From the NCBI GenBank assembly GCA_977030845.1, contig OZ365112.1:26536001-26600000 (forward strand): a stretch of 64,000 nucleotides of DNA, written 5' to 3'. Position 1 is the stretch's first letter, and the number at the start of each line of letters is the position of its first letter. Positions 1 to 38,128 of the stretch are shown here, one piece after another. The position numbers were made by a program, and so were the translations under genes. The notes under the pieces were generated by a model. That model was given only the letters and a program-made list of their open reading frames with translations. It did no database searches and was not told the DNA's origin. The stretch is from Fimbriosthenelais zetlandica. Its lineage: Eukaryota.

Positions 1-2645
1 TATTGATCGAAGTCTTTGCAAAGATGGCCAGTGTTCGTGCAGGTTAGGGTACCATGATGGATTGTCCAACGGAACCTGCATATTACGAACCATCAGTGGT
101 GAATGCAGTCAAGATTCAGACTGCTCTGAAGCTGTTACCAATTCGTTTTGTAACCAATCCTCCTGTGCCTGCAAGGATTCATACGAGACAAACTTGGATG
201 GCACTACTTGCGCGGCCAAAAAAGTAGGCTCAAACTGTAGCCAAGAAGAAGACTGCTCCCATATCGTAGATGGGATATGCTCCTCTGAAAGATGTGTCTG
301 CCCCAGTGGTTTTGAAATAGCAAATAACACATATTGCCAAAAAAGTGAGTCTATTTTGCAGAAATCTGGTTACTTTCTCTTGGGTAGCGACTTTCTACTG
401 TGTTTTTTGTAAGAAAGTTTTACGTCATTCCCTCTTGTATAGATTGTCCTGTCTATTTTGATATTGTTTCGTCATTGTCTTTTGGAGTAGAACTAACCTA
501 ACAATTATCTTATGTATATTTAGCAGAAGCTTTTACAACAAGTGGGGAGTTTATGGCAGCACCCATAACTCACAGCATGACAACTCAGAGCGATATCACA
601 TCAACAGTCACTTCCACTATTGGCAAAGACACAGAAATTCCAAGCGAATCATCCCTAACAACATTCACCAACATTGACACAAACACTCCAGACACATCCT
701 TAGGAAATGACATGAATGATAATATGACCACTAGTGAGATATCAGAAGTAACACTCACTCAAAACCCCAATGTTTTTACCAGGGTAACCAACCAACCAAC
801 AATTTCTAGCGCAAATAGCGAACTGAACATCACAACCGAGACTCATATGAAACACGTTGTTAGCACAGCAGAATCCAATGACTCTTTTGGAGTCACTACA
901 AGCCCAGCAGATGAGTCCAATTTCACGACCGTGTTTTGGTTTCATCAAACAAGATTCTCTGAGAATGGTTTATCTTCCTCTGAGCAAACCTCAAGTGATG
1001 AACTGACTACGGAGGAGGGGGTGAATCCCGCTGAGATCTCTACTCCACGCATACCATCTACTCCAGGCCATGGGGAGGCATCTAACAGCAGCCCTTCCAC
1101 TGTAACTATTTTAAGAGATGAGGACCCTTCACCATCACCTTCTGATGAGTACACCAGATCATCAGCAGCTCAGTTTGTCAGCACAGACGCTCCATTCTCA
1201 GGTCATTTTCACTAGGGTGGAAGCATACTATATCTTTAAGCACAGTAACTTTGTCAAGGGGGTGGTGAGCATGCGCTTAATTTAAAACAAAGTTATGGAC
1301 AGACTAGCAGTTTTTTTTACAACACCAGGTGTATAAAAATCTTCGCACTTTCATTTCACTGAACCCAAAGCTTTGACAATAATAACAGGGTTCTGAGCTT
1401 TACAGCAAAACTAAGGCTGTCACTTGTCATAAGGTTATTGGATGTGACTGTCAGAGAGGCAGAACTTATTGGCAATTTGTGTATAGCAAAGGTGAGTTTA
1501 GCTGCAATTAAACCACAACATTATAGCTTCCAGGGCAGGTGTAGCCCATCTCCTAGTGGGATGCACCTGTTGCTGATGAGGTTGAGAACTAGTTATCAAA
1601 ATTTGTTGGGCGTTGGAAATGGGACCAGGAAAAGGCGGGTAGCTCTCATAAATATCAAGTGATGGGCTTGTAATAGGCTAAACTAGTTCCACTGGTAAAG
1701 CCTAGGTGGGGTAGCTGCTTGAGACTTGTTTCTTGAGAGCTGGAAATCCATGAACATTTCACCAAGATGTTTCACCCAGAAACTGGGATCTTTTTTAACA
1801 ACATTTAAGAAAAGAATGTCTTTGTATGTGGTCAGTGTCCATTTCACCAATGTGTTTCAATATTGCATGATTAGTTAGTAACTTGAATCACAAGTACATG
1901 TAATGCACGATTCCTAGTTAAAAACGTAATATTCACGCACGGATATATTATAATACTCAATGTAGAGCACTTGGCACATCAGGCATGTTTTGAAACTTGT
2001 GCACTTCGTGCCCCTGCCACATGGCACCACATACTTCAGCCTTCTTGTCAATGCCAATTAATAAAGACTACTAATTCTAACAAATAAATATTTGTTATTT
2101 TGAGGCCAAGCAGAGATCATTTATGTGTTTCAGGAGAATTGGGAGACCCGTGCCAAACCTACTCAGATTGTACGGCTGTACCATGGGCGGCATGCATGGC
2201 AGAGAACCTCTGTGCATGTCGGCTCGGCTTCCAATTGGAACCGACGGAACAAAAAAGTTGCCTCAGGCGCCATATTGGAAGTTCATGTACTAAACAGGAA
2301 GACTGTAGCTATGCTGTTGTGGCCAGTCATTGTTACAAGCGACAATGTCAGTGTAACACTGGATATCGCGTGGCATCAGACATGCAACAATGTCTCGCAC
2401 GGCGACTTGGTGAAAGATGCAACACAGACAATGATTGCACATATTCAGTGAAAAATAGCATTTGTGTGAAAATGCGTTGTCGTTGTAGGCATGGGTATAA
2501 TCCTGACAGAGTTGACAGATTGTCATGTACAGCATGGTCAGGGCCCAGAGATACCATAATAATAGCTTTTTGTGTCATCGGTATCTGTGGATGCTCGCTA
2601 TTTTTAATTTTTGTTGGTTTCGTGGTCATAACAATTATCATGTGA
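1..2645 (+). CDS. Locus A (5'-partial): EB-like Cys-rich modules, Ser/Thr-rich mucin-like stalk, 3 EB modules and a C-terminal hydrophobic anchor with no cytoplasmic tail
   Basis: Exons <1-344 (frame open from base 2, donor A|GTGAGT), 524-1201 (NAGNAG acceptor at 524/527, S/T/E-rich, weak phase-1 donor CAG|GTCATT) and 2134-2645 (acceptor TTTCAG, three LGxxC-x5-C-x7/8-C-x4-C-x-C-x2-G[YF]-x8/10-C modules, then IIIAFCVIGICGCSLFLIFVGFVVITIIM, TGA). All junctions are phase 1. EB assignment is by cysteine pattern (PF01683-like), not by HMM. Confidence 0.78.
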
Positions 2646-2766
2646 CATCATTTGCTGGGCAATTAGTTAAAAAGGAGTATCTAAACGCTCTAAAAAGATT
2701 CTAATAGTTTTATGTTCAGACTGCAAAGCTGGAAAGGAACCTATAGCAGCTTTACAAATATGGCTA

Positions 2767-2772
2767 AATAAA
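2767..2772 (+). promoter_or_regulatory. Candidate polyadenylation signal for the locus A terminal exon
   Basis: AATAAA about 120 nt after the TGA at 2643-2645. A second AATAAA lies at 2976-2981. Confidence 0.4.
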
Positions 2773-3062
2773 AAGAACCTAACCAAGATATTTCCCCACT
2801 TTTCATGTGATGGGTCCTTAACAGTTATTAAATGAATTGATATCTTGATCATTCTACTTACATTAAAGCTAAATGATTCACAATTACTATAATACTTCAG
2901 CACATTTCAAATAATTATATTTTAATATATAATTATAGTCAATGGTATTTATCAAACCAATTGGGATACCTTCCAAATAAATCATGGAAGTTCTTTTAAA
3001 GATTTAATTGGAACATTAATCTTGACAGATTGATTGTGAATAATTGGCTGTGAACATTTCAG

Positions 3063-6000
3063 GAAGGATCGGGGATGAGACGTGCTTGAGTGACTCTGAC
3101 TGTAGCTCAGCTGTTACTGACAGTTACTGTAACAATGGACGGTGTGATTGTCTCATTGGTTATTACGCCAGCTACTCAAACACTTCTTGCATCAAGAGTA
3201 AGTCATCTAGATAATCCAGAAAGTGAATTCAATGCCATCCATTGAAACAATCCTATGCAAGAAGTTTAGGCAAAGGTTTATGCAAAAGTTTCAATTGCTA
3301 TAATTATCAAATCTAGGGATAGTTGGAGATGAGTGCGACTTCCAAGAAGACTGTAGTTTCAACTTTAGTATGTGCAACAATTCTTCAGCTTGCCAATGTC
3401 AGCTTGGGTATATGGCCATACAGAATAACTCGGAATGTGCCAGAAGTAAGTACCTAAATTAAGAATGATATGATGTGTGTGCATGATGTTACAAGGGGGC
3501 AGGTTTGGTGGGAGGGTATTGGGGAGTTCCAGGGAAGTCTAGACACATAGATTTATGAAGAATCAAGAAAGGAAATTGCACCAAATTTAGTTTTTCCGTG
3601 ACCTAAATATGTCAATTTTCTAAATATGAACAATCAATTTAATTTCAGGAATGTTAGGTGACCCTTGTCAGGAGGATATTGACTGTACTGCCAGTGTTGC
3701 TAATTCCACATGTGATAGAAGCAGCACAACATGTGCTTGTCCTATAGAGTTCATGGATGCTGACAATGGTAGCCGCTGTGACATAAGTGAGCAATAATCT
3801 ATTGGAGAGCACCCTTAATTCATTCTCAATTCTGCCCCAAATAAGATCATAGATGCATATAGCTTATGAGTATTGTAGCATTTAAAAAATACACTTTTCA
3901 TTTTACTCTAGGGCCAACGTTAGCACCTTATATTCCGGACATAGCGGAGGGCCCGCTCTCCTGCTGGTATGGAGATAATATAGAAGCGTTATTTTCCTGT
4001 GATCAAGATCCCAATTCTATATGTGATCAGGGCAGATGTGTCTGCAAAGGAGGTTATGCTCGAGCATCCCCACAAAGCCTTTGTTACAGTAAGTTCAATG
4101 TTGTTAATTGACAGACCTTAGAAATGATATATTTCAAAGAGCGCATCTTTTCAAAATGGGACGCCATTTTATCATTCTAAACTCTTTTTTTTCAGGAGCC
4201 AAAGGTTTCCTTCTCAGAATGACTTTGGTTGCAATTGCTGGAAAATATTTCATGGATCCATTAATATATTCCTCAGATTTTTGGTCAAACTCTACTGACT
4301 ATCTGAACTTTACTCAAAGAATTGAAGTTATGGGGGTAAGAAAACATCTTTTACGACGAGATCATTACATGGCAATAATATGGTTTCATCAGCATGCGAA
4401 TTACATGCAAAGTTCTTCTTTTCATATCAAGCAAAATCAATTAATAATAGCTTAATTCATTGTTAATTATCTTAATGTAATAGTTATACAATCTTAAGCA
4501 TTGTCTCATTTAACAGGTTGATTTCATATTACGGGACATTGTACCCGGCTACCTTGAGGCCCGGGTTCAGCGGCTAGACGAGGGATCTACAGGTCTCGAG
4601 GCAGCTATCATGATCTTTACTTTGTTGCAATCCAACATCACTTTATCAGAGTTAAACTCTACCATAGGTGACAGCTTATACAGGTAATTCCCCACTAATG
4701 TAAGTAGTTTAATTAGTAGATCTTACAGAAGATGTTTAGTAGATTAATAGATTAGAGATTTTAGATAGGTTACTGTGTGAAATTCAAATTTTTTAAATTT
4801 CATTTTAGTTCATCAGGAGAGCTTGGCAAGAGCAGGATCTATACGTCCTTCCCCTTGATCGACGCCATTGTAACGGGTAAATCCGGGCAAAAACTTCACT
4901 TTGAAGTTGATGAAATTGAAAAGATATCTAGAAAAGTTTTCTGAATTTTGGATACTCAATATTATTTTGTTTTTCAAACAGATCTGGATGAATGTGATAT
5001 TAGTATAGAGTTGCCTATCAATGACTGCGCACCGAATGCCAGTTGTTACAATACTGATGGATACTTTGAATGTGTCTGCCATCTGGAATTTAAAGACCAT
5101 TCCGGATCAAATGTATTTGACGGAAGAAACTGTACACGTAAGTCAATCCAGTATCTCTCTTCTCTTCTGGATTTCCATATTGTTTCAATTGTTTTATTTG
5201 GCATCCCGTTACTTGCTTTGTTATGTTCTTTTATTGTTTGTAATATTGTAATTTCTAATTTTATTGCTATTCTAAATATTTTTAGATGAAGACATTTACA
5301 AAAGATTGCTGGAAATTCAGTTGGAAAGAATGAGGTGGGTTGCTCTGCAGCATACACATATATGGTATTGGAACATTCAGAAAGGATTTTCGTGATTTCA
5401 GTATAAATTTTCCAATTTTCTTGCGCTTTTTAGGTGTACAGGTGGTATTTGTGAAACACCATGGGGTCGTAAGTACAACTTTTACGTGATAAGATAACTC
5501 GTCCTGCAATTCTTATATCTAAACTTAACTCTAGTCTTACTGAATCTAAACTTACTGAATTACTTATTGCAGTTGTATCTGGAGTGCTTGCAGTCATTTT
5601 CACACTTTTGTTGGGGCTGATGATCTTGGAGCTTTGCTGGAAAAGAAAGAAAACGTGAGTCAATATTGAACTTCAAATTCTCAATAATTATACATCGGCT
5701 GATGAAGCAAAGTATAGTTCGGTTTACAAAAGTATTTTTTCTTACTTTTGATTCATTGCTAGCCTACCATTTCATCAAAAGCAATTCCCTTTAAGGTATA
5801 TTCGTCGAACTATGCGAGTACCAATATCTCAACTGCTGGCGGACACTGATGTTTCCTTTGAGAACAACATGCCCCGAAAAGTGAGATTAGCGCCCACTCC
5901 AACAGTCCATGTGATAGAGGAATGGCTGCCATGTAAGCCATCACGGACTACCAAACCCACATCAACTCAATCCAGATCAAGACGAAGCAGCTACTACAGT

Positions 6001-6614
6001 GACAACGGTAATCATAAGTACACTGATTCACACACAGTTCAGTGCTAAACCCATCAAATTGATTCTGTACACTCATAATGCTTGAGTCTAAATTCGAGCC
6101 TATTACTTTTTATGAATGGCATTTTTCAGAGACCTCATCGGAAGACGCCTCCAGTTCTGACAGAGATGCCGGTTCATCATCTTGTCAAGATGACTCTTCT
6201 GACACACCATCTGACTCATCCATAGTTAACAGAGTGACTTTGCATTCAGAGCCCCAACCTGGACCTTCTTATATTGAAGGTGAATTCGGCTGTAACCAAC
6301 CAGAAGAGAGAGACAAAGGGCCGCGTGAGAGTCCAGCTAGCCCTATCAAAGATTCTGAGACTTCAAGTCTTGTGGAAAGTGGTCCAGAACAAGGTTCTAG
6401 TCCAGAACTAGGACATGTAAACCATGGACTGAGTTCAGGCGAGGATGCTAGGTCAGATCTGGGACATATAAACCACGGTCTCAGTTCTGATGAGGACGAC
6501 ATCCCTGAGCTGGGACATAATATAAACGATTGGCTGAGTTCAGGCGAAGATGGCAGCGCTGAGCTGGGACATATAAACCATGGTCTCAGTGATTCAGATT
6601 CAAGCTTAGTCTAA
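3063..6614 (+). CDS. Locus B: 4 EB-like modules, SEA-like domain, Ca-binding EGF, TM and a ~235-aa acidic cytoplasmic tail; no 5' end of its own, so probably an alternative 3' half of locus A
   Basis: 13 exons: 3063-3197, 3317-3445, 3649-3786, 3912-4088, 4196-4335, 4517-4683, 4809-4876, 4982-5137, 5286-5334, 5434-5468, 5573-5654, 5796-6007, 6130-6614. All GT-AG, frame closes to TAA. SEA-like: FLLRMTL..SDFWSNSTDYLNFTQRIE..GYLEARVQRLDEGS. EGF_CA: DLDECD..DCAPNASCYNTDGYFECVC. TM: LVSGVLAVIFTLLLGLMILELC followed by WKRKK. Confidence 0.83.
6405..6599 (+). repeat. Coding tandem repeat, 4 x 51-54 bp (17-18 aa), in the locus B cytoplasmic tail
   Basis: Units start at 6405, 6456, 6507 and 6561: ELGHVNHGLSSGEDARS / DLGHINHGLSSDEDDIP / ELGHNINDWLSSGEDGSA / ELGHINHGLSDSD. 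Confidence 0.9.
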
Positions 6615-7415: not shown

Positions 7416-7424
7416 GGGGCGGGG
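7416..7424 (+). promoter_or_regulatory. GC box, possibly in the gene C promoter
   Basis: GGGGCGGGG in a G-rich patch. Donor-like sites at 7446 (GTAAGT) and 7841 (CAG|GTGAGT) could end non-coding 5' exons. No transcript evidence. Confidence 0.25.
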
Positions 7425-8894: not shown

Positions 8895-11800
8895 ATGGCG
8901 AGTCAGAGAAGCAACATTGTGCTAGTAGCAACAGTCCTGCTTGTATCATATGGTAAATAATACTACTCTTGACCTTCTGCAATTAGGCCTATATTACTCT
9001 TTATAATACTACACACTTTCTGAAGTTTTCCACACTTTCTAATATACCTACAGAAAGGGCAAATTCAAAACGTATGTTAGATCTCGCGATCAAATGGACA
9101 GAAACATTCATATTGTGGTCAAAGATTGAAAATATATGTTGTGTGTTTCAATACATTTTGTGTATTCCCATTTCAGCCAGTGCAGCTTGTCCACAAGGAA
9201 AATATGAGTGTTCAAATAGTGTTTGTGTAGATAATGCATATCGGTTGGACGGGAGAAACGACTGTGGGGATAACTCAGACGAAGGTAAAACAATTGAAAT
9301 AAAAAAAACTTCCGTTTGTAACCTTATAAAATGACAATGACAAGTTTGAAAAGGAATCATATCAATTGTACTCATGACATTTTTCAAGAAATGAATCATG
9401 CATACCCCCAAACCGTTTCTAATCTATGATTATATATTTTCCAGTACAAAATCACTGTCAAAAAGTCGCTCATTTCCACTGTAATAGTGGCGATTGTATA
9501 CCAATCGGCTACCGATTAGATGGCGTAGGAGAATGTATGCCAGCCAAAGAGGATGAAGGTAAATATATCTAAAAAATATCAAATTTGATCGGCAAAATTC
9601 CATTCCAAGATCTACTGAACTCATTTAGTAAGATCTGGGTCTCCTGAGGATTGGACCAAGTCTTCTTGGTGTGGATACCTGGTATAATTTTCAAGAATAA
9701 TACTTGTGACGCTTAAAGTTATGAATGTGTAATAACATCAGACTTTGTTTATGACACATCTCTTTGTGATTTGCAGCAAAGTATTTGGGAGACCCTTGTG
9801 ATCACAGGTGGTGTTGTCCCTGTGAGAATTACGTCAACAATTCCCGCTGTGAGAATAACCGATGTCGGTGCTTGCCGGGATATCTAGCTTCTGGGAGGAA
9901 TGACTTGTGCACACTCCGTAAGCAATTTTCACTTTTAATCTTCAGTGAATTTACTCATGTGTGGCGTCCCAACAAAATGACTCAATCTTACAATGAACCT
10001 GTACATATTGTGTTGAATAATTCAATTTGAGCAATTTTGAAGAAATCGTACATATTTTCACAAATTTCTTTGTTTCATTAACTATTTACAATAGACGTGA
10101 ACAGAGATTAAATAATGCACTGTACATTGTTATAATGCAGCATTTCTTTGACATTCTTTTACATTCCCTCAAAACACATGAATCATCCTACAAATTTAAC
10201 ATACTAAAAGCTACCACTCGTCTTCTAAGACACACAAATGTTGTCGATTGTTTCATGTGTGATGTGTTTCCAACATAATTTATGTTGTTCGTCATATTTT
10301 CTTCCAGGTAAAAGTACATGGACTAATCCCTTATCTTTCAGCCACCAGGAAAAGGCATAGTCTCATACCGCCTTGAGATGTTTAAATTTTCAGCTACCAT
10401 CATTGTACTCAAAAGCAAATTTAACATTGTACTGAACTGCATTTATAACATTATTCTTCAATACATTTCTTTTGTACCACTGTACAATCATAGGGGAGGT
10501 TGGAGACTCTTGCAGCACAAACACAGATTGCACAGCAGCAATAAACGACAGTACTTGTACCATTTCTAAATGCACATGCAATGTAGGATTTGGTGTTAGA
10601 AATGGAGACAAGAGATATTGTATCTTCAGTAAGTCCTTCCCACCCACAACTGAATAACATTAAGCACAAAAAAGGCATGCTTAGGATAAGACATAGAATA
10701 GGTTGCACAATGAAAACTGTTGCATTAAGATATAGATGTAGGCCTAGTATTAAGCCAGATGTTTAGTTGGTGTAAGAATTCCTTTTGATTATTTAAGAAA
10801 ACATTTTTCTTATTCTCAAGTTTATTCATGTGTCTAACACTATTCATAAGTCTACCATATATCTCTTACATTTGGGGTTTAGTCAGATTCAGTTGCCTGC
10901 TTTCGTCAAAAGAAAGTGCAAATCATACACGCTAACGCACACTTATTTTTCTAACCAAACTAACTCTATCATAGAAAATAATGTACTTGCTTTATTCTTC
11001 TGCTGTTCATATCTGCTTTACGTTTTTCTGTTTGAACAATTTGAATGAAATTCTTAATCTAATAAACAAATTAATAATACCTTTCAACTCTGAATTGACC
11101 ATCGTTTTTACTCTACTGTCACTTCATTTTTCTATTTTGTGATTTCTTGTGTTGTTTTTAGGTAAAATTGGAGACATTTGCACTACTGATGCAGATTGCT
11201 TTTCGGCTGTTGAGAACAGTAGCTGCTCCAACCGTGTTTGCATCTGTGACCCTGGTTTTAGAGTGGTCATGAACCAAACGTCTTGTTTGCTGAGTGAGTT
11301 CAAATAATAATTCAATTTACTAATACAATCCTACCAGATATTGTCTCTCCGACGTCAATTTTAGTAAGAGAGTACCTTCAAGATAATTCAGAAGCATTAT
11401 AGGAACAATCTAAATAGACTGGGCCATTCAGTGGTCATTCCTGATGTGGGAAGAAGTCTCTGTGAGAAAAACCTCACTTCAGGGGCCATTCCTGATTTGG
11501 GAAGAAGTCTCTGTGAGAAAAACCTCACTTCAGGGGCCATTCCTGATGTGAGAAGAAGTCTCTGTGAGAAAGACCCCACTTCAGTGGCCATTCCTGATTT
11601 GGGAAGAAGTCTCTGTGAGAAAGACCTCACTTCAGGGGCCATTCCTGATGTGAGAAGAGGTCTCTGTGAGAAAGACCTCACTTCAGTGGCCATTCCTGAT
11701 GTGAGAAGAAGTCTCTGTGAGAACGACCTCACTTCAGTGGCCATTCCTGATGTGAGAAAAGACTTCAGGGGCCTATATTATGTTAAACAGATGTATCCTG

Positions 11801-21394: not shown

Positions 21395-21399
21395 ATTGG
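21395..21399 (-). promoter_or_regulatory. CCAAT box (reverse orientation) upstream of gene E
   Basis: ATTGG about 110 nt upstream of the ATG at 21506, in a CpG-containing patch within AT-rich DNA. Confidence 0.25.
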
Positions 21400-21505
21400 T
21401 TCTCATTGAGTAGACACAGTCACGGACCAGTGATTGTGTTGTCTGTTCTATTCATCCTTAGCGACAGACATGAAACACTGATTCACTGTGAACCATTCAA
21501 TCTAC

Positions 21506-24500: not shown

Positions 24501-27500
24501 CAACTGTGTGACCGATACCGACTGTTCTGATGCTGTCAACTCCAGCCTTTGTGACAGTGGGTTCTGCGCCTGCCAAGATGGTTACATTGACATTGGTGAC
24601 AATACTCACTGTAGAATAAGTGAGTATGTAAGCGAGAAGGGACAATGCTCATAAAAGGCCATGTTTTGCAACCTTTAACAGTACGTAAAATGAAATAATT
24701 ACTTGGGATATATAAATAAAACATGTTTCATTTGTTCTAAAGAAATTATAGGAGATCCCTGTACTGAGATGATTGATTGCCAAGCCACCCTGAACAATAG
24801 TGAATGCTTACTGAATATCTGCAATTGTGTATCTGGATACTATACCTCCACAGACGACACATACTGTGTCCAACGTAAGATACTTTATATCTTCATCAAA
24901 GTAAAGATTTTGGGCCTTCAATTACAAAAGAAGAGAGGAAAGTTTGGCCAAGTGCCCTATGCTATCCGGCCATCTCTCCAGTCAATATAGGTATTGTTAC
25001 ATTGTCGACTACGGTATAATAACCGATACGGTCTAAGTGTTTAGAAATACAGTATATTATAGTTGTTCACAAATACATTATAGGCGTTATTGGTGATCCA
25101 TGTGCCCTGACCAGTGACTGTGCTTCAGTAGTCAATAATAGCATCTGTGAAACTGATCAGTGTAATTGTGAGCTTGGATATCACAGCCTCGATTCCGGCT
25201 TTACATGCATCCTACGTAAGTCTCATTATTTTACTCAAATAAGAAATTATATAAAGGAGCTGGAATAAAAGGAACTTCAGCAAAACACAGACCAAAAGTC
25301 TGAGAGCATAGTACTAGAACATGTAGGACACGATTCAAGTTTCAAAAGACTACAGATAATGATTAATCAAATAAAGTCAATGACGTTAAAGACATTGTAT
25401 TGAACTGCAGGGGAAATTGGTGACAACTGTGCAATAGATGTTGATTGTTCAACGTCAGTAGTGAATACCATTTGCGCTGAAGGAGTCTGTGAGTGTGAGG
25501 TGGGCTACTTCCCGAACATGACAATATGCGAGAGACGTGAGTTTAGTTCAAAAGTACTTCACGTTAGATAAGAGAGGATTTTTCGCAAATATTAATGGAT
25601 TAATAATGCAAATCCTTTTCCTCTATATGTGCAGGTCGCATAGCAGATGACTGCATCATAGACCTTCAATGTTCAGCATCCGTCAGCAACAGTTTCTGTG
25701 AAGAACAGAAGTGTGCTTGCTCACCAAGTTACTACTCAAGTCTAGATGGCTTTGTTTGCATAGAAGGTATACAGTTTAGCTTGTTCAGTAGCCTCATTGA
25801 ATCAGGATATCATGGAAAGACAAGTACCGTTATGCCTTTATGAACTAGCCATTAGCTAGGTATATAATCCACTGTTCTGTTTTCATTACTTTACAGTTCG
25901 TATTGGTGCTGTGTGCGCGGTTGATGAAGACTGCACATTTACCATCGATGACTCTTTTTGTTACAACAATGCCTGCTTATGTCAGAGTGGTTATTATCCA
26001 ACTGACGATGACACCTTTTGCATGCCATGTATGTACATTTGTAAAAGCTGTTATGCTGAATCTGGGACTTAAAAGTATAATAAAGTAAAGATCCCAGAGG
26101 CCTGTACTTTTGCTCTGTTTCAGGGAGGCTTGGAGAGAGCTGCAATAATGACAGCAACTGCTACTCCGCCGTGCAAAACAGCTTCTGCATCGATACAATT
26201 TGTCAATGTGCGGAAGGTTTTTACGGTTCCCAAGACCAGTCCTTTTGCTTGAGAAGTAAGCCAACAATTTGGTAACTCTACTGACAAAATCGAAAAGTAT
26301 TTCGAAAGCATTCCACTTGAGAATGCAAACGTTTCAATATTATTACAACAGGGAGATGGAAAAGGGTCAAAATCACAACTTATATTTTTCTTCTAGACCT
26401 CGTTGAGGATGAGTGTGAGGATTCTAGTCAGTGCCTGAGTGTCATTGAGAACAGCTTCTGTGATAACATCACCAACTCATGTCAATGTTTGCTGAGCTAT
26501 GTGCCAAGTGACGATAGGACCAGCTGCGTCAAAAGTAACGAAGCCAAACCTACATCCTAAATCCAAACATTTATATTAAAAAGAAAAAAGAAGAGAAAAG
26601 GAGAAATACAAATATCCTCAAGACAGTGATATTTTCATTTCAGGGCAGATCAATACTCCGTGTCTTGAAGACCAGGACTGCCTTCCATCCATACCTTGGT
26701 CTGTATGTTATCAGGGTACCTGTCAATGTTCTGTGGGTTATTATGCTTCCCAAGACGAAGCTACGTGCACTCAACGTTAGTATACCCTTTCTTTAGAAGA
26801 AACTTACTAACTTTGTAAGCCAGCAAGCAGTAGCAGTAGACTAACATTTGACCTTCCAAAAGCTATATTGTTAGGCCTCCTTATAGATGATAAAAAAATT
26901 TCCATTTCAGGGAAGCTGAATGATACTTGCAGAATCAGCACGGATTGCTCAGCTGTAATTGCTGACAGCGTTTGCTCCAACAGTTTATGTTCATGTATCA
27001 GTGGTACAAGACCTGGAGCTCAGGGTAATGCCTGCATTCAAAGTAAGTGCAAACATCAATGGATCAATATTATATAAAAGTATATGCAGCAAGGTGATTC
27101 AAATTCTAGCTTAGAACTGCCCTTATGATATGAAGACACATATGGGCTTCGATTGCAGTTGTACTTGGGGATGACTGTGATAGTGAACGGGACTGTTCAG
27201 ACTCTGTCATTCAGAGCACCTGTGTAAATGGTCAATGTGTGTGTATTGACGGTTATCGGCAGACGGGGGATGAGGTCACTTGTTTAAGAAGTAAGTATAA
27301 GCTCTCAACAGCTTCTATCCATTCACAAATCTGTCATTTAGAAAACTGCATACTTTATGGACTTTCACTTTCAGATCTTCTTGGGGATAGATGCTTTGGA
27401 GATGAAGATTGCTTTGTACAGAATGCGCATTGTGACCGCTTCAATTGTGGATGTTTTGAAGGGTACTATCCCTCTGATGATCGACTGAATTGCTTCAAAC

Positions 27501-29713
27501 GTAAGTACACATTGATCCTTAGATATATAATGTGACAGATTATATGATCTTGGATGTACTAATGTGATTTTAGATTGATCTTTTTTGGATTGACATTTAG
27601 AACGTTCATTTACAGGTCAGCTGGGGGACTTCTGTTCAGAAGACGAAAACTGTGGCCAGGCAATTGAGAACAGTGAGTGCAGAAGAGGAACATGTGAATG
27701 TTCGTCATTATATTCAAATTCAGGAGATAATCTCCAGTGTTTGGCGAGCAAACCTTTTGACCCCTGCCAGACAGATGCTTTCTGCCAGTTCTCAGTTCCA
27801 AATAGCATCTGTGACGAGGGCTTATGTAGGTGTCCGCTTGGATACGGCTACAATGATACCTTGGCTGATGTTTGTGTCCTGAGAAAACTCAATGATGGCA
27901 TCAAGTGTTTTAGTGACCGCGAATGCACGGATGTCTTCCCAAACAGTTACTGCCGGAGCAGAATCAATTGTGAATGTATACCTGGGTATTACGAGAACAG
28001 CACAAATGATGGGTGTGTACTGAGAGAGCTGGGAGAATTCTGTGTGACTGATGATTACTGTGAAGCGATTGAAAACAGCCACTGCTCCAACTCCCTCTGC
28101 TCCTGCCTCCCAGGCTTCTCCGCCAGACTTGACACTGTCAAATGCCTTCTGAACATCCTGGGTTATGCATGTAGCTCTGATGGAGACTGCGCAGCCATCG
28201 CCAATGGAGAGTGTGGCTCAGACGGTAAATGTGCATGTAAGGATGGATACTTCGAACAAGGAAATCACACATGTATGGGTAGGAGGTTCAATGATACTTG
28301 CCAGTTCCAGACAGACTGTCTAAGCTTGGATTCCTCAATATGTCTGAGTGGGACTTGTCGTTGTCGACCTGGATTCAGGGAGGACTATCTGACCGGGCTT
28401 TGTAATGCTAGTCTGTTAGGAGAGGGGTGTAGGACTGAGCTAGACTGCTTGATTCATACTGATAGCACACGCTGTTTGAATGGCACCTGCCTTTGTAATC
28501 CAGGATATTCAAGGACAGACAACTCCACATGTGGATATGGTAAGCTTGCAAGATATGGATTGCATGGTAACATGGACATTTCAAGAATATAGTCGTAGGA
28601 ACAGAATTTGTACACCGATTTGTTCTGATTATATAGTATTCATAAATGTAATACTCCTAATAGCATGTGTTTTGTGTTTCAGACCTTCCGAATATCCGTC
28701 TGTATGTATCATTCCCTAAGATTATACATAACTTAAAAATAATGAAGATTTTGATAGAAGCTTAAACTGATTTCCATCGACTTCTCCTTATAAATTGTTA
28801 GCTCAATTGTTTTGATCTCAAAACTGCACTTAACACTCCTATTTTCAGTTCCCCGATATTCTACAACTATGGCTGGATTGGTAAGGAATTGTGCGCTGTA
28901 TACCACTTTTTTATGACATGATCCATTTTCTCAGTAATTTTTATCTATGAGTACATTTTTATTTATGAAGTAAACTATGTTCTTATTCCATCATCAGGAA
29001 TACTGGTACTTATTATCTGCCTCACCCTTCTATTTGGCATCATCATTGGTCTCTACATTCCTTATTTCAAGGTAAGAACAAAGTATCAGATAAAGTAGTG
29101 TCTTGGATATTAGGTCAACAAAAGCATTTTCGTTCATGCTTTTCAACCAAAGCTTTCGCTCAATACATTGCAGAAACATTGCTACAAACTGAAGAAAAGA
29201 AAGATAAAGGGTAAAAAAGCCATCAAGAGGATGGATTCTGCTCGTATCGCTCCAATACTTCAAGGAAAGACATCCCTGAATGGCCTCCCACCACCATTCA
29301 AATCCCAACTGAGCAACAAGAAGAACAAATTAGGAAGTATCTACCGATCAGAGAGTCGAAGACCCATCACTTTCAATGAGAATGGAGAACTATACATGAA
29401 AGGAGAAGACTACCGAACAGATTCACCCAGTATGACTGGGAGAAGCACACCCTTCAGATCAGTGGAGATACCAACTCGCCCTGGTACTCCCCTCGATACC
29501 AATGGACGACCCATGACGCCATCTTTTGGGCTTTTCCTGCAGGAATCTGAACTGGATGAATCACTGGAAGTACCGGAAGGAGGGGAGTTCCTCAATAGGG
29601 GACAGCAGGAAACCGTTAATGAATTGAACATTTTAGAAACGGATGGCTTCCGGCACCCACCAATCTTAACCATTAACCAGATACCTCCGACTGCTGAGGT
29701 TTATAGACTTTAA
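21506..29713 (+). CDS. Gene E: large type I membrane protein, signal peptide, 2 LDLa-like, 27 EB-like, TM, ~180-aa tail (1515 aa)
   Basis: 28 exons: 21506-21575, 21715-21828, 22009-22128 (GC donor), 22238-22390, 22621-22752, 22857-22982, 23089-23220, 23442-23579, 23695-23826, 23981-24112, 24203-24334, 24488-24619, 24743-24874, 25084-25215, 25411-25536, 25635-25766, 25897-26028, 26124-26255, 26397-26534, 26644-26775, 26911-27042, 27159-27290, 27375-27500, 27616-28539 (7 modules), 28683-28701, 28849-28880, 28998-29071 (TM), 29174-29713. Total 4548 nt, open to TAA. Confidence 0.87.
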
Positions 29714-31604: not shown

Positions 31605-31650
31605 CCAATCACTGATTGGTGACAGTGATTATTCTCTTCCTTATATAAAA
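31605..31650 (+). promoter_or_regulatory. Possible gene F promoter: inverted CCAAT pair plus a TATA-like box
   Basis: CCAATC-act-GATTGG at 31605-31619 and TATATAAAA at 31642-31650. A donor-like AG|GTTAGG at 31826 and an acceptor at 32940 precede the signal-peptide exon. Confidence 0.25.
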
Positions 31651-32971
31651 TGAAATCCATGATTCATTATATATTATGTAAGAACATAATTGCAATACCA
31701 AAATTGCTTATGTAGGCCTCAACAGGTCTTAGCCGCAGTTTTATTTGATTAATTAGGAACTGGATTAGTTCCTCCCCGTGAAAAATAGTATGGCATTATT
31801 AGTTTAGTTTGTCAATATATATAAGGTTAGGTGTAAACATCCACAGTGAAATGTGTGGAATACAGAATACAGTACGTGACTTCACACTGTGAACAAAACT
31901 CATATTTGATATTGGTCTCCTGCAAAACCTTCTATCGCAAAGGAAATTCCAATATAATATTAGATTAATGTATTTGATATACCTGAGACATAGTATATAG
32001 GACTAAGTGAACGTTGTTTTTCATTTTCGTGATAGTCATCAGGATATATAAGGAAGGAAGCACATTAGCTCATGAAATAAAGTGATTTCGAAACATAAAT
32101 GAATGTTTGAAAACACCGTTGATAGGCGGACACATGGAATCTTTAATACGCTTAAGTTAATATGTATTCATGAATGGAAGTGAGCTGAGCCTGTAAGCTG
32201 ATTTGATCCTGATCACGATCAAGGCACATATAAATGATTTACTTAGAGGCCGCCCACTGAAGATTTATCTAATATTATGACATATTATTATAACTCGTTG
32301 TGTGTTGAGAAATATGAGCTTTTTCATTCTTCTTTTCCCACAAATTACTGAGGTGTTTGTAGTTAGAAACATTTAAGTGTTCAGCCAAGTTTCTTAGAAT
32401 ATTTTCATTGAGTTCTCTCCCGTTTTTGACATAATAAGGGTCTTATTGGTTGACCTGGTGTTGCTGGGGAACTCGGGCAGTAGCGGGAGATCTCACTTGT
32501 ACTGTATATAATAACAAGTATAGTTCATGCCATATAGGCGCATGTTTTAGGAGCTAAAATTCACTGCCAATTAAGTGTCGAATTTACAATTCATCTTGAC
32601 AATGAATTGTATTGTATTTATCTCGTATGGAGCTATAATAATTCACAAGGTCGCCAAGTTCACGTTCTAAAGGAGTAAGGTACTGGTCATAATCCTGTTA
32701 AGTCTAAAAATCATTTCGATCCAGTGAGTTTTGACCAAGCATGAACGCACTCAGTGCCACCGTCGAAAGCGTGTTACTATTTCCTTCTATGGTTATAGCT
32801 GGTAATTACAGACAAATGTTTTGTATAGAACACTAATAGCTACTGTAGTATGACTGCCTTTTTCGCATGTAAATCATCTGATTATACTCGATCTTCAGAT
32901 AATATAGCATTGATGCTATGACATAATATTGTTCTTCTAGGTATGATACAGGGGTGGCAAGCTAGACAGAC

Positions 32972-35900
32972 ATGATGAGTTTCACTAGCCTCTTTATCCT
33001 GACACTGGCAGCTGTACTGTTTCACAGTAAGTGTTCTATTCTTAACTCACTCTAACTCTATAGCGCTAATTCCATCCTGTACTGCTTCCATGTTATTTTC
33101 TGAGAAATTTCTATTAAATTTTCTAAAATAGTATATTAACATGAGTAAGTATGGTATATTACCATTACAGATGTGGAAGGCGTATGTGATCCTGTCACAG
33201 AATTCACCTGTATATATCAAAATGCATGCATTCCAATAGCTAAGGAAAGAAATGGAGTGAACGACTGTTTCGACAACTCAGATGAAGGTAATGTCCAGTC
33301 AATGTTAAATATATTAATTAATAACGTTATGTAAAGGGTAGGGATATTTAAAATAGTGCTACACTTAAACAATGATATGCTTATTTAAATCAGGAGATTT
33401 TGAATTTTGAAAACACATTCAACAATTGTCCACAACCTGTAGAGTTCAAAAGAAATCAATTTCTCGTCTTTGTTTCAAGTGACCAGCAGTTGTTCGAAGG
33501 GTGGACAGTTTCTCTGTACCAGCGGAACATGTATTCCTATAAGCTACAAGGATGACGGCGACAGGGATTGTGCCGACGGGGCAGACGAACGTAAGATATG
33601 AAACTAAAACCTTGCATTGTTATTTGTTATTCAATATTTGAAGACTATTGTATACATCCTTTCATTCATGTAGCATTCACTCAGAAAATAATAAAAGCAA
33701 TTTCATTTAACACAGAGAAGCTCATAGGAAGCGACTGTGACCACATCCCAAATGGATGCTGTCCATGCAACATGTACGTCAGCAACTCATTCTGTGATGC
33801 TGGGAAATGTAAATGCTCAGACGGTCACTATCCCAGCACCCTTCTCAACGACTGCATTATAAGTAAGTACAATTTCTCCTCAATAATAAACTATTTCACC
33901 AAAAAGTACATTCAGAAGGATCATGATACTAGTATATGCAGAAACATTATGAGTTTGAGCGTTTTGAATTGATAAATATTCAAAGTCTCGGAATGGTAAA
34001 AATGAGTCTTTTTTGCCCCAGATGCATTACAAGACACATTTTAATGGCATATTCTGCAAAATAGAATCTCATGTTCCAAGTGTGCACTAAGCACATATTT
34101 GCATGGCCTGTCCAAAGGCAGAGCAAAAGAAGCTCAAGGGTGGAAAAATCACCTCCTGATCTGTGTAGAGCTCTTAATGAACTGCTGCTCAATCGAAATT
34201 GGTGAACACCATCTCCCAAACTGACCTGACTCCCCACTGGATTAGCTTAATCTGCCATTACTCTACACTATCATCTCTCTTCATTCACCCCACAGGGACT
34301 CTGGGTGACCCTTGCACCAAGGTCGTTGACTGTAGTGCAGCGGTACAGTTCTCAACATGTGACAATAAGAGAGAGTGTTCATGTGCTCTTGGTTACTACC
34401 CAGATTTCAACGAGACATTTTGTACAGCAAGTAAGTATGAAGACTGTCTTAGACATGGAATTTACTCAATCGTCACTGCTTTTCAATAAGTGCCCATCAG
34501 ATATATGATGAAATTGATCGGAAATTGGATAAAAGACCTAACATGGCACATTGATACTTTGAATTATTATAATGAGACCAATAAATAATGTGTACTAACT
34601 TAATCTAATTTTCTTTGGGTAACAACAGGAGTTATAGGAGACAATTGTACCGCAGACAATGAATGTTACGCGGTTATGGAGGGCTCACTGTGCGTGGCTG
34701 GTAAGTGCGAGTGCGGCCCTGACTGGTTTAACCGTCTTGATGGTTCAGGATGCTACCATCGCAACATCGGGGATGCTTGCGACAAAGACAGCAACTGTCT
34801 AGCCGGTATAAACAATGCCTTCTGTGACACCAACAATGTGTGTGCCTGTGTGGCAGGCTGGTTACAGAAAGAAAACACAATGGACACTTGTAGGAGAATG
34901 ATCTTAGGTTCTGACGCCTGTCCGAGCAGTGGTCAGTGCGCCCCTGGCATCCCTAACTCTGAATGTGTTTCCGGGAAGTGCCAATGTGTCGAAACTTACT
35001 ACGAGAACTTAGACAAAACCGCCTGCGTCCTCAGGAAGATCTACGACGCGTGTACTTTAAACCAGCAATGTGGAGGAGTGCCCAATACCATGTGCAGTTC
35101 AGCTCAGGTCTGTCTGTGCCTCAGTGGTTTCCTGCCCACTGTAAGTAAAGTTAACTGTAACCCACTGAGGGTTGGTGATTCCTGTAACACCACGGCACAG
35201 TGTCGCGTTGGTCTTCCCAATAGTCAATGTTTAAATAATATGTGTGAGTGTGTTACTGGGTTCATAACAGACACAGACAAAACCTGCAGAGTCCGATACC
35301 TGGGTATAGACAGTTGTTCTAGTGAAACTGACTGCTCAGGTGGCATCCGCAACAGTAACTGCACCGATGGCACATGTGCCTGTAATGCAAATTACCGGAC
35401 TGCCACTAACTCTATGAGTACTTGTAGTATAATAAGTATAAGCTCCACTTCGTGTTTAACTAATGCTAACTGTTCTAGATTTCCTGATAGTATTTGTAAG
35501 GCAGGGAAATGCGCTTGTCCTGATGGCTACAGGGATGAGACCGTCAAATGCACCAAGCTGTACTTTGGTGGGCCATGTACGGCAGAGGCTCAGTGTACCG
35601 CCGTGGTGCAGAACAGTACCTGTAACGGGACGACCTGTGTCTGTGCCGATCCGAGTCATTTATATATAGAGGTAAGTCACTTTACAATGTTTAAATCATT
35701 GTCAATCTCTTGGGCATAGTCATAAATTTGGTGGAAGAACCCATGAATGTTAAGAATGTTCCTAGTCTTGGCATTATATATGTTGCCATCCTAAATAACA
35801 TTGGTGAAGGAAGGATCACTACTTACATGTCGTAAATACCAAAGACATATTCAAATCTGAAATATTTCCTTCCATGCCTTTCCATGTACCCAGCACCATT

Positions 35901-38128
35901 CCTGCCCCAAATCCTAAATTCCTCTCTCTTTTTTGACAGGTTGACCGGTCAAGGGACTATAATACCCTAACTTTTAACCTTAACATTATTTTATTCACTA
36001 ATTTCAATGAAGGTTAAGATAGTGCCTAACAAAATTGTCTGTTATAAGTTTACTGTTGTCTGTATCATTTATAACACAATGAGAATCCAAACACTTCAGG
36101 TTCCAAAATGGTTAACAACCATATTCGAGTGCGGAGATCATTTTGTTTTAACCATGAAGGTGTCTATTGTTTATCAGGATTACAACGCATGATTTCACAT
36201 TTATAATTTGTGTTGAACCTATTTTTGATTTCTTCATGGGAGATATATAACTGCATGATCAACCCCCCTTTTGATTCAATGTTACTAACTCAGTCAGTCA
36301 AAATTGTGTTGAGGAGAGAAGAATGACTTCATAATATAACATACTTTTAGCTTTAAGTCAAAGGAACCAATGTCAAACTCATTCAGTATATATATCCTAA
36401 CGTAACAAATTCTGAAATATTCTTGAAATTCATTAAAGTATAGATGGTAAACTTTCTACCACGCCAGGACCTAGCGTTAATTGATCCATAGAATCTACGC
36501 TTGTACGCCAAATATTTGTCAATATCACTTGTATAACAATTAGATTTTAATTGACGTCTCTGATTTGTTCTGGTATAGTCTACCACCTCATGCAGGCGGA
36601 GGGTGCTGGGTGTAGACAGCTGTACCATGGACAGTGAATGTCGGGGAGGTATCGCTAATTCCCTCTGTGGTGCTAACAAGACCTGTCTCTGTGGTCCGGG
36701 ATATGAGACCACTGACGACAGATTAGCTTGCCTCAGCAGTAAGTTTTAATCAGTATTTTACCTTCAGAACTGCTCTTGAAAGCTATCACTATTAAAATAG
36801 ACATCCAGCTGTAGTATATTCTTGCAATGACTATTTCTTCAATACATCATCTCTTCTTAGGAACTTAAGGAATTTCTGACCAAATCAATTGCTTAATATG
36901 TACGCAGCAATTAAACCAAAAGTAAATTTATAAACTGTTCTTTGTATTTTGCAGCTGGAGCGTCTACAGAAACAGAGTGAGTACTGTGGGAATCTAAATC
37001 GAATTTGTTAAGGAAATAAATATGTTTCCCTTCTGCATTAGATTGTTAACACCTTTTAACACCTTTTGATATATTCTCTAGGTGTACAGACTTTGCCTCC
37101 TGTAAACCTTGGGCAGGTGAGTACTTCATCTTCTAAGTAAACTCCACCACACAATCAGTGACCGATTAACTTCTATACCGAATTCCATTGCCCAATCCTA
37201 TTTAATAACAATCATTTTGATGTAGTTTTTGACAACTATTCCAACCCATACACCAATTAAGAAAACTGGGAAAACTTATAGATACTAGACAGTTTGACTT
37301 AAAATCTAAAATAGGAATTGTTAAATTACCTCTGGCTTTTCTTTTCAGTTGCTCTGATCATCGTCCTCCTTTTGACACCTCCAGCAATAACTGGAGTAGT
37401 GATGGTCACCTACAAAAATATACAAGATAGAAAGAAACGGTGAGAAACGGTGGAATTCAATTCCAACTTTGTACATACCATTGTATATACTAGCAAATAT
37501 CACCAATCAGAAATTTTGGTGCAAGAAATTCATAGCATACTTCCATGATTCCTTCAAGCTCCTGTCAAAGATAAGCTTTGGAAATCAATGGTAGATGCTT
37601 TCTGCTATTTTACTTTCTATTTCTTTAATTTCGTTAAGCAGGTAATGGTGACTTTCTCATAGTCTCTTGAGCACCTACGATCTAGATCCACACATCAGGG
37701 GATTGTTTCAAAAGAACGATCAAATTCATAGACTTTTACCTAAAGGCTCATGGAAAACGTATTTCCTTTGAAGCAACCCCCATATACTGTATATGATCTA
37801 TTCCAACTACACACTGTTAGAAAGGATGCTGGTATCTTATAACAGTGCACGGGGCTAACTTGCATCTTTCAGGTTAGCAAAGAAAGGACCGAGTAAGAAG
37901 AGGACGGACCCATACCGTGAACTGGGTATGGCCATCATTCCGACCATCACGTCCATTCCACCCAAGGATACGGCCTTACACAACCTCCCCGAAATAGGTG
38001 CAGACTGGAGCATTACCAATGACGACACATGTAATCATAAGTTGACACCTACTAATGACTGCACTCTGCATTTAGTGGGCAACCATCGCTGTCATCTCAC
38101 AAAGATTATTACTCCAAAGAAATTATAA
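32972..38128 (+). CDS. Gene F: type I membrane protein, signal peptide, 2 LDLa-like, 11 EB-like, TM, ~95-aa tail (723 aa)
   Basis: 11 exons: 32972-33026 (MMSFTSLFILTLAAVLFH), 33171-33287, 33480-33590, 33716-33862, 34296-34430, 34629-35671, 36579-36738, 36955-36976, 37082-37116, 37349-37439 (TM VALIIVLLLTPPAITGVVMVTY), 37873-38128. Total 2172 nt, all GT-AG, open to TAA. Confidence 0.86.

What the first reader, a model, noticed from the sequence alone, without database searches (positions are those of the whole stretch)
1..38128. Tandem cluster of LDLa-EB cell-surface receptors with variable module number
Seen: four complete same-strand paralogs (C-F) share signal peptide, 2 LDLa, n EB-like modules (10, 9, 27, 11), micro-exon stalk and TM. 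The A/B locus upstream is built from the same module. Known: EB modules occur in Cys-rich invertebrate proteins that pipelines often label loosely as EGF-, tenascin- or fibrillin-like. I do not recall a characterised family with this LDLa2-EBn-TM layout, but I cannot search. Inference: tandem expansion, copy-number variation and divergent tails resemble a recognition, adhesion or immune receptor family.
Basis: partly seen in the sequence, partly recalled or inferred. Interest (0 to 1): 0.8.

Follow-up and report, generated by a model that had tools for sequence, protein, structure and literature searches.

The report
Tandem LDLa–EB membrane receptor genes
Four neighbouring intact genes in a worm-like invertebrate encode single-pass surface proteins with a small LDL-receptor-type binding tip on a stalk of 9 to 27 cysteine-rich EB modules; the family is old, shared with an annelid and a clam, and unnamed and unstudied in what I searched.

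Summary
All 60 EB-like modules lie on the + strand between 1 and 36.7 kb; there are none on the other strand and none in shuffles. Splice-site and phase modelling gives four uninterrupted ORFs: C 609 aa, D at least 594 aa, E 1515 aa from 28 exons, F 723 aa ending at 38128.

Each has a signal peptide, two LDLa modules, 10, 9, 27 or 11 EB modules, two or three micro-exons, a TM exon and its own tail.

All LDLa units have four cysteines, lacking C4 and C6, but keep the calcium-cage residues and the predicted LDLa fold.

The same head and order occur at an ortholog of F in another assembly, in Ridgeia (annelid), in Solemya (bivalve), and in two uninterrupted short contigs that are probably transcripts. 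All relatives are "hypothetical", and I found no paper on this layout.

The duplications are old: modules are at most 51% identical. The TM and tail of F are better conserved than its stalk. This does not look like a fast-diversifying immune cluster.

Most likely these are calcium-dependent binding or endocytic surface receptors with stalks of different length. No RNA runs were listed, so the exon joins in this species remain unproven. Interest is modest.

The parts
1..6611 (+). Locus A/B, with its 5' end outside the window. EB exons at 2-344, 2134-2528 (three modules, running on into a hydrophobic stretch and a stop at 2645), 3063-3197, 3317-3445 and 3649-3786. A degenerate EB/EGF-like exon at 3912-4088. 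SEA-like exons at about 4196-4876. A calcium-binding EGF exon at 4982-5137. A TM exon at about 5473-5654. An acidic tail with 17-aa repeats up to 6611.
   Evidence: Pfam EB and EGF_CA hits. tblastn to the C-terminal cassette of P0157, P0005 and P0007. Six-frame segments and splice sites. 51-nt repeat at 6411-6590.
8895..14231 (+). Gene C, 609 aa as modelled. Signal peptide 8895-8952; LDLa1 9177-9284; LDLa2 9445-9558; EB1 (CCxC type) 9777-9917; EB2-4 at 10494-10628, 11162-11293 and 11895-12026; EB5-10 in one exon 12578-13366; micro-exons 13523-13541 and 13650-13675; TM 13835-13911; last exon 14133-14231 (tentative).
   Evidence: LDLa 37.5 and 24.8 bits.
15602..20622 (+). Gene D, at least 594 aa. 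Signal peptide 15602-15671; LDLa1 15998-16138; LDLa2 16277-16396; EB1 16557-16709; EB2 16972-17103; EB3-9 in one exon 17242-18144; micro-exons 18753-18771, 18967-18984 and 19212-19234; TM 19744-19823; tail exon 19956-20078. The 3' end is unresolved: either read-through to a stop near 20105, or a further exon in the ORF 20245-20622.
   Evidence: LDLa 37.2 and 17.0 bits.
21506..29713 (+). Gene E, 1515 aa from 28 exons. Signal peptide 21506-21575; LDLa1 21715-21828; LDLa2 22009-22128 (GC rather than GT donor); EB1 22238-22390; 19 single-module exons between 22621 and 27500; EB21-27 in one exon 27616-28539; micro-exons 28683-28701 and 28849-28880; TM 28998-29071; 180-aa Ser/Thr/Pro-rich tail exon 29174-29713.
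   Evidence: LDLa 36.0 and 21.1 bits.
32972..38128 (+). Gene F, 723 aa. Signal peptide 32972-33026; LDLa1 33171-33287; LDLa2 33480-33590; EB1 (CCxC type) 33716-33862; EB2 34296-34430; EB3-10 in one exon 34629-35671; EB11 36579-36738; micro-exons 36955-36976 and 37082-37116; TM 37349-37439; tail exon 37873-38128, which holds a YREL motif.
   Evidence: Exon-by-exon conservation with the ortholog locus L001. LDLa 29.5 and 37.0 bits.

Best explanation
This is an old tandem cluster of four intact paralogous genes, C to F. Upstream lies a related gene (A/B) of a longer type. C to F belong to an unnamed lophotrochozoan family of type I membrane glycoproteins.

Shown: each protein has a signal peptide, two LDLa modules, a special first EB module and n further EB modules. 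A short juxtamembrane linker coded by two or three micro-exons follows, then one TM helix and a paralog-specific cytoplasmic tail. The LDLa modules have lost the C4-C6 disulfide but keep the acidic calcium-cage residues and the predicted LDLa fold. The EB modules are compact helix-plus-hairpin units related to EGF.

Inferred: the LDLa pair is a calcium-dependent ligand-binding tip. The disulfide-rich EB chain is a stiff stalk that holds the tip at a paralog-specific distance from the membrane (9, 10, 11 or 27 modules). The different tails couple binding to different intracellular fates. For F this is probably endocytosis or sorting through a conserved YxxL motif.

The proteins therefore most likely act as cell-surface binding or uptake receptors, not as a rapidly diversifying immune repertoire.
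For: Architecture: continuous ORFs across 11-28 phase-compatible exons, and strict strand bias of the modules.

LDLa: 6 of 8 units are above the Pfam cut-off, all ending at profile position 34 of 37. An 18-unit alignment has four invariant Cys and an invariant DE, and most units keep D/N-G-x-x-D/E-C. The AlphaFold model of F LDLa2 (pLDDT 86.6) superposes on VLDLR, CD320, LDLRAD3 and megalin modules at TM 0.75-0.87 and rmsd 0.6-1.0 A.

EB: Pfam hits. The two-module model has pLDDT 93.9. Its nearest predicted relatives are C. elegans EB proteins.

Family and age: L001 is colinear with gene F from LDLa1 to the last exon. The same order, LDLa then LDLa then CCxC-EB1 then EBn, occurs on one strand in Ridgeia (L005) and Solemya (L004). 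Short contigs L002 and L003 carry uninterrupted ORFs with head, EB modules and TM.

Constraint: between F and L001, amino-acid identity is 0.57 for the head, 0.48 for the stalk, 0.85 for micro-exon plus TM and 0.72 for the tail. The matching dN values are 0.31, 0.49, 0.11 and 0.24, with dS saturated or about 0.77. YREL in F aligns with YRDL in L001.
Against: There is no transcript evidence from this species, so exon joins, micro-exons and 3' ends rest on splice signals, phase and paralog or ortholog conservation. The 3' ends of C and D are the weakest. No ligand, expression site or phenotype is known for any member. The YxxL motif is short and is seen in F only. Tails of C, D and E carry no family I could recognise. 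Loss of the C4-C6 disulfide could weaken or change calcium and ligand binding; D-LDLa2 and C-LDLa2 have altered cage positions. The AlphaFold models of such well-known small folds lean on prior knowledge. Stalk stiffness is inferred from general knowledge of EGF-like tandem arrays and was not measured.
Confidence: 0.6

Rival explanations
1. These are matrix or cuticle anchoring proteins of epithelia, working like nematode MUA-3/MUP-4. The long EB chain spans the space to an apical or basal matrix, and the tails tie into the cytoskeleton. On this view the proteins are mechanical links, not ligand receptors.
For: Close EB-rich relatives in gastropods are named mua-3-like by NCBI and have EBn, a weak SEA match, EGF_CA and a TM. 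Locus A/B in the window has the same SEA-like, EGF_CA and TM cassette. Solemya P0007 combines that cassette with the LDLa head. Very different stalk lengths would suit spacing functions.
Against: Genes C-F lack the SEA-like and EGF_CA cassette and have no vWA domain. Their tails are short (C, F) or Ser/Thr/Pro-rich (E), with no recognisable cytoskeleton-binding family. Between orthologs the head is better conserved than the stalk, which fits a binding tip.
Confidence: 0.2
2. This is an immune or self/non-self recognition repertoire. Tandem paralogs with variable module number and divergent tails would recognise diverse targets, perhaps with extra diversity from skipping symmetric module exons.
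For: There are four paralogs in tandem with different module numbers. Gene E has 20 single-module exons of 126-153 nt (19 of them 126-138), all multiples of three with phase 1 at both ends, so any of them could be skipped without breaking the frame. Module number also differs between F (11) and its ortholog (13). The stalk evolves fastest.
Against: The duplications are ancient: modules are at most 0.51 identical, and there are no recently repeated units. There is one-to-one orthology with purifying selection. The head is conserved across phyla. No pseudogenes or fragments lie in the cluster. No expression or challenge data exist.
Confidence: 0.12
3. The gene models are artefacts. On this view the exons are not joined as modelled, and the array is one or more differently spliced or decaying genes.
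For: No RNA data were available. One LDLa exon needs a GC donor. Micro-exons of 18-35 nt are hard to prove from sequence alone. The 3' ends of C and D are ambiguous.
Against: Each of the four units has its own start codon with a hydrophobic leader, its own TM exon and its own stop. There are no in-frame stops in up to 28 chained exons. Substitutions in F's 35-nt micro-exon are almost all synonymous in the modelled frame. The whole exon series is conserved in L001. Related species yield contiguous ORFs with the same order.
Confidence: 0.05

Closest known systems
Unnamed lophotrochozoan LDLa-EB proteins: Solemya velum KAL5010874.1 (P0007), Ridgeia piscesae NP493_958g01022 (P0168) with its downstream EB exons, and unannotated contigs of runs ERR13301064 and ERR9682780 (P0093, P0166)
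   Same: Signal peptide, two (three in Solemya DNA) four-cysteine LDLa units, a first EB module with a CCxC motif (as in genes C and F), further EB modules, and a TM in P0093 and P0166.
   Different: Module number ranges from 1 (P0166) to over 20 (Solemya). Solemya ends in a SEA-like plus EGF_CA cassette that genes C-F lack. EB1 of D and E has lost the CC pair. None has a name or a tested function.
LDL receptor family ligand-binding repeats (LDLR, VLDLR, LRP2/megalin, LDLRAD3, CD320)
   Same: Pfam PF00057 match, acidic calcium-cage residues, and a predicted fold that superposes at rmsd about 1 A. Like these receptors, the proteins are type I membrane proteins with the LDLa modules at the N-terminal, membrane-distal end.
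   Different: Only four of the six cysteines are present; the C4-C6 disulfide is absent. There is no YWTD propeller or EGF-precursor domain and no NPxY in the tails read. Only two LDLa units are present, and they sit on an EB stalk.
EB-module proteins (Pfam PF01683) of nematodes and insects, such as C. elegans ZC84.1, PQN-25 and BLI-5, and wasp 'prion-like Q/N-rich protein 25'
   Same: The same module by Pfam and by predicted fold. A C. elegans ectodomain survey treats EB, WR1, lustrin-type Cys-rich and EGF domains as one continuum (bioRxiv 10.1101/2024.07.08.602367).
   Different: Pfam found no LDLa in the wasp protein scanned. The nematode proteins were not scanned here; from my own knowledge they combine EB with Kunitz domains. 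Most have no assigned function.
Gastropod EBn-SEA-like-EGF_CA-TM proteins, auto-named MEGF6, CED-1 or mua-3-like (Aplysia XP_035829175.1, Biomphalaria XP_055901712.1, Physella XP_059167429.1)
   Same: They are the best EB-array matches, at about 33% identity. Their membrane-proximal cassette matches locus A/B in the window.
   Different: Pfam finds no LDLa head in them. Genes C-F lack their SEA-like and EGF_CA cassette.
CED-1 / Draper / MEGF10 / SREC engulfment and scavenger receptors
   Same: They work in a comparable way: type I receptors with a long array of EGF-like modules and a tyrosine-motif tail. Pipelines borrow these names for relatives.
   Different: No EMI domain. The modules are EB rather than laminin-type or atypical EGF. 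No NPxY. Names aside, no homology beyond the general EGF-like module was seen.

Membership tests
Pfam EB module (PF01683) | Match to the family HMM above the gathering score (24.3 bits) | tested here: met
   Six long exons score 35-109 bits with 2-7 stretches each. The EB1 exons of C and F alone score below the cut-off, at 20.0 and 10.6 bits.
Pfam EB module (PF01683) | Conserved cysteine framework of the repeat | tested here: met
   In a 135-row two-module alignment, 11 of the 12 cysteine columns are invariant and the twelfth is at least 90% conserved. The consensus is GDxC-x5-C-x8-C-x4-CxC-xxGY-x8-C. Each repeat here has six Cys. From memory, Pfam describes eight for its 52-residue model, which spans slightly more than one repeat.
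LDL-receptor class A domain (PF00057) | Match to the family HMM above the gathering score (24.1 bits) | tested here: met
   6 of 8 units score 24.8-37.5 bits. D-LDLa2 (17.0) and E-LDLa2 (21.1) fall below.
LDL-receptor class A domain (PF00057) | Six cysteines forming three disulfides (C1-C3, C2-C5, C4-C6) | tested here: not met
   All 18 aligned units (window, L001, P0007, P0093, P0166, P0168) have four invariant Cys. The C4 position is variable, and each unit ends at ...DE before C6.
LDL-receptor class A domain (PF00057) | Acidic calcium-cage residues (D/N-G-x-x-D-C-x-D-x-S-D-E) | tested here: met
   DE is invariant and most units keep D/N-G and D/E before C5. C-LDLa2 and D-LDLa2 deviate. Calcium binding itself was not tested.
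LDL-receptor class A domain (PF00057) | LDLa fold | tested here: met
   AlphaFold model of F LDLa2 has pLDDT 86.6. Foldseek against solved LDLa modules gives TM by query 0.75-0.87 and rmsd 0.6-1.0 A. This is a prediction only.
LDL receptor gene family (LDLR/VLDLR/LRP) | YWTD beta-propeller / EGF-precursor homology region and an NPxY tail motif | tested here: not met
   The spliced models consist only of LDLa, EB, linker, TM and tail. No NPxY is present in the tails as read, and Pfam finds nothing in the E and D tail exons.
MUA-3/MUP-4-type matrix receptors | LDLa plus EGF arrays together with vWA and SEA domains next to the TM (definition from my own knowledge) | tested here: not met
   Genes C-F have micro-exon linkers instead of SEA or vWA. 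Locus A/B has a SEA-like region and EGF_CA before its TM, but its 5' end is outside the window.
CED-1/MEGF10/Draper | N-terminal EMI domain, atypical EGF repeats, and NPxY/YxxL tail motifs (definition from my own knowledge) | tested here: not met
   The N-terminus is two LDLa units, the repeats are EB, and there is no NPxY. Only F has a YxxL.
Unnamed LDLa(4-Cys)-EB family (defined here) | Signal peptide, at least two four-Cys LDLa units, then EB1, then EB modules in that order on one strand, with a TM after the array | tested here: met
   Window genes C-F, L001, Ridgeia L005 and Solemya L004, and P0093 and P0166 including the TM.

The most novel reading that the evidence does not exclude
Gene E's 20 symmetric single-module exons, and the equivalent exons of the other genes, may be skipped combinatorially. 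One locus would then yield many receptors of different stalk length and surface. In that case the cluster would be a lophotrochozoan diversity-generating recognition system built on a calcium-binding LDLa variant that has dispensed with its third disulfide.
Probability: 0.12. Interest if true: 0.65.

Novelty: new variant of a known kind. Interest (0 to 1): 0.35.

Why it matters
It defines an undescribed receptor architecture conserved in at least annelids and a bivalve, so it is probably hundreds of millions of years old. In databases it is hidden under "hypothetical protein", or split across gene models as in Ridgeia.

It offers a natural experiment on LDLa modules that keep the calcium cage without the C4-C6 disulfide. 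It also offers paralogs that differ mainly in stalk length and cytoplasmic tail.

It is nevertheless a reshuffling of well-known extracellular modules, which is common in these animals. No function, ligand or expression pattern is known.

Tried and rejected
- **RNA or DNA read support:** two look-ups listed no run.
- **Word-indexed protein search with the Solemya head (P0007, residues 25-165):** it found only itself.
- **Same search with P0093:** it found three true relatives plus ordinary LDLa proteins.
- **Naming the organism through the neighbouring class C GPCR:** no named invertebrate hit came back. The annelid origin rests on other agents' notes and the Ridgeia match.
- **PDB sequence search with an eight-module EB exon:** nothing better than E = 0.03.
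- **Foldseek of the two-module EB model against PDB:** no match below E = 0.26. Single modules resemble cysteine-stabilised alpha/beta scorpion toxins (TM by target 0.53-0.62 over about 33 residues). I treat this as a shape resemblance, not homology.
- **dN/dS between F and L001:** dS is saturated except in the tail exon, so only dN and identities are reported.
- **A first model of F that joined EB11 directly to the 35-nt micro-exon:** rejected because the phase did not fit the frame in which the micro-exon's substitutions are synonymous. A 22-nt micro-exon (36955-36976) encoding TGASTE, as in gene C, resolves it.
- **A D stalk using a 7-nt exon:** rejected in favour of the path that reproduces the TGA..G / D....WA motifs of gene C.
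- **One Pfam call failed** on a reference containing stops.
Full report
**What is in the sequence.** The window is AT-rich eukaryotic DNA with about 36-44% GC. An EB-like cysteine pattern scanned over six frames gives 60 non-overlapping matches. All are on the + strand between 77 and 36731. There are none on the - strand and none in 20 shuffles of bases 1-38128. Pfam confirms the EB module (PF01683) on all six long exons tested, at E 1e-8 to 1e-31.

**Gene models: module exons.** Single-module exons are 126-138 nt, mostly 132. They start two bases before a codon and end one base into a codon (phase 1 on both sides). They have ordinary AG and GT sites. Each gene also has one long exon with 6-8 modules.

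**Gene models: heads.** Upstream of each array lie an ATG exon with a hydrophobic leader that ends in phase 1, and two LDLa exons, also phase 1 on both sides. The second LDLa exon of E needs a GC donor.

**Gene models: stalk, TM and tail.**
- Downstream of each array lie two or three micro-exons of 18-35 nt, a 74-91 nt TM exon and tail exons.
- The micro-exon paths were chosen by splice score, phase and absence of stops.
- The paths reproduce shared motifs. C reads TGASTEG / DSGFPMWA, F reads TGASTETE / CTDFASCKPWA, D reads TGAPPG / DGLAIWA, and E ends in ...YGWI before its TM.
- The 3' ends of C and D are tentative.

**Resulting ORFs.** None contains an internal stop.

| Gene | Length | Exons | EB modules |
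|---|---|---|---|
| C | 609 aa | 12 | 10 |
| D | at least 594 aa | 11 or more | 9 |
| E | 1515 aa | 28 | 27 |
| F | 723 aa (stop at 38126-38128) | 11 | 11 |

**Independent support from other genomes.**
- The best hit of a library-wide HMMER search with F's long exon is an ORF on a 2.66-Mb contig of an ENA assembly (L001). L001 is colinear with gene F exon by exon, from LDLa1 to the last exon.
- F's 35-nt micro-exon differs from its L001 counterpart almost only at synonymous positions in the modelled frame.
- L001 has 13 modules against 11 in F.
- Two short contigs, of 1483 and 1100 nt, carry uninterrupted ORFs. P0093 has LDLa-LDLa-EB1-EBn-TM-tail. P0166 has signal peptide-LDLa-LDLa-EB1-TM. These units sit on separate exons in the window, L001, Ridgeia and Solemya, so the contigs are most simply transcripts. 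They indicate that such exons are joined in relatives.
- In Ridgeia piscesae DNA (L005) two four-Cys LDLa units, a CCxC-type EB1 and ten further EB modules follow one another on one strand. The annotation splits them into a 226-aa gene and a 546-aa gene.
- In Solemya velum DNA (L004) three four-Cys LDLa units, EB1 and at least 24 EB modules do the same.
- No sequencing run could be listed for the window itself. The joins in this species remain inferred.

**The LDLa head.** Six of eight units pass the Pfam gathering score, and all end at profile position 34 of 37. An alignment of 18 units from five sources has four invariant cysteines and an invariant DE. There is no cysteine at the C4 or C6 position. 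Most units keep D/N-G-x-x-D/E-C-x-D-x-S-D-E. The AlphaFold model of F LDLa2 (pLDDT 86.6) superposes on solved VLDLR, CD320, LDLRAD3 and megalin modules at TM 0.75-0.87 and rmsd 0.6-1.0 A. The units are therefore LDLa modules by sequence and predicted fold, but they fail the six-cysteine criterion. This agrees with a separate first-reader note on the same stretch. A further protein, P0167, has eight four-Cys LDLa units and no EB, so the variant is not confined to this family.

**The EB stalk.** A 135-row alignment of module pairs has 11 invariant cysteine columns and one nearly invariant. It gives a confident model with pLDDT 93.9. Each module is a short helix followed by a beta-hairpin. No solved structure matches the pair below E = 0.26. 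Single modules resemble cysteine-stabilised alpha/beta toxins in shape. The nearest Swiss-Prot predictions include the C. elegans EB proteins ZC84.1, PQN-25 and BLI-5. PDB holds no sequence relative. A C. elegans ectodomain survey states that EB, WR1, lustrin-type and EGF domains form a continuum.

**Age and selection.** Modules within and between genes are on average about 30% identical, at most 51%. The tandem-repeat finder sees no repeated exon units. The table compares F with L001.

| Region | Amino-acid identity | dN |
|---|---|---|
| Head | 0.57 | 0.31 |
| EB stalk | 0.48 | 0.49 |
| Micro-exon plus TM | 0.85 | 0.11 |
| Tail exon | 0.72 | 0.24 |

dS is saturated, except for about 0.77 in the tail exon. 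This is an old family under purifying selection, strongest on the membrane-proximal and cytoplasmic parts. F's tail holds YREL, which aligns with YRDL in L001. Pfam finds nothing in the tail exons of D and E that were scanned.

**Relatives and names.** The top EB-array hits are gastropod proteins auto-named MEGF6, CED-1 or mua-3-like, and wasp "prion-like Q/N protein 25". Pfam shows them as EBn, with a weak SEA match and EGF_CA in some, and no LDLa. Locus A/B in the window ends in that same cassette: a SEA-like region, EGF_CA at 4982-5137, a TM at about 5473-5654 and an acidic repeat tail. Solemya P0007 joins the LDLa head to such a body. Genes C-F look like a derived short-linker form. Two full-text searches found no paper on an LDLa-EB receptor.

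**Interpretation.** The anatomy is shown. It is inferred that the LDLa pair binds ligand with calcium, that the EB chain is a spacer of paralog-specific length, and that the tails direct different fates. I rank this binding or uptake receptor reading first. A matrix-anchoring role like MUA-3 comes second, and an immune diversity system third. The third rests only on tandem arrangement and skippable exons, against clear signs of age and constraint.

**Verdict.** This is a new architecture made of known modules, of modest interest until expression or a ligand is known.

Noticed in passing
window 9179-9557, 16000-16395, 21717-22127, 33173-33589; L001, L004, L005: Every LDLa unit of this family has four cysteines instead of six (C4 and C6 missing) but keeps the acidic cage. 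This holds in the window, another assembly, Ridgeia, Solemya and two probable transcript contigs. An unrelated protein, P0167, has eight such units. This looks like a real LDLa subtype worth a structural look.
   Followed up: yes
window 22123-22134: The donor of gene E's second LDLa exon reads GAAG|GCAACA where the paralogs have G|GTAA. It is either a GC-AG intron or a weakened site.
   Followed up: partly
window 11427-11758: A 51-nt tandem repeat of 6.5 copies, 93% alike, lies inside the intron between EB3 and EB4 of gene C. Open frames run through it on both strands.
   Followed up: no
window 18294-18662: A degenerate 20-nt tandem array of about 17 copies (CCTTAGAATGGACGCGCGGT) lies in the intron between the long EB exon and the first micro-exon of gene D.
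   Followed up: no
window 6063-6611: The probable cytoplasmic tail of locus A/B is very acidic and Ser-rich. It carries about 3.5 copies of a 17-aa repeat (ELGHINHGLSSGED...) encoded by a 51-nt tandem repeat at 6411-6590. Pfam finds nothing.
   Followed up: partly
window 2134-2645: A three-module EB exon of locus A/B runs on without a good donor into a hydrophobic stretch and a stop. This is the possible alternative 3' end that another first-reader note raises.
   Followed up: partly
window 52569-54047: An intronless ORF of 492 aa is a rhodopsin-family GPCR (7tm_1, E = 5e-20).
   Followed up: partly
window 60932-63840: A class C GPCR with ANF_receptor, NCD3G and 7tm_3 domains lies in two adjacent ORFs, with a break between 63178 and 63235. 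A 70%-identical relative exists on an unannotated contig (P0172).
   Followed up: partly
L005 10001-30099 (Ridgeia piscesae JAODUO010000957.1): The public annotation appears to split one LDLa-EB gene into a 226-aa head gene and a 546-aa gene holding the EB modules.
   Followed up: partly
window 553-1215: An ORF of 220 aa in an intron of locus A/B has no Pfam match.
   Followed up: no
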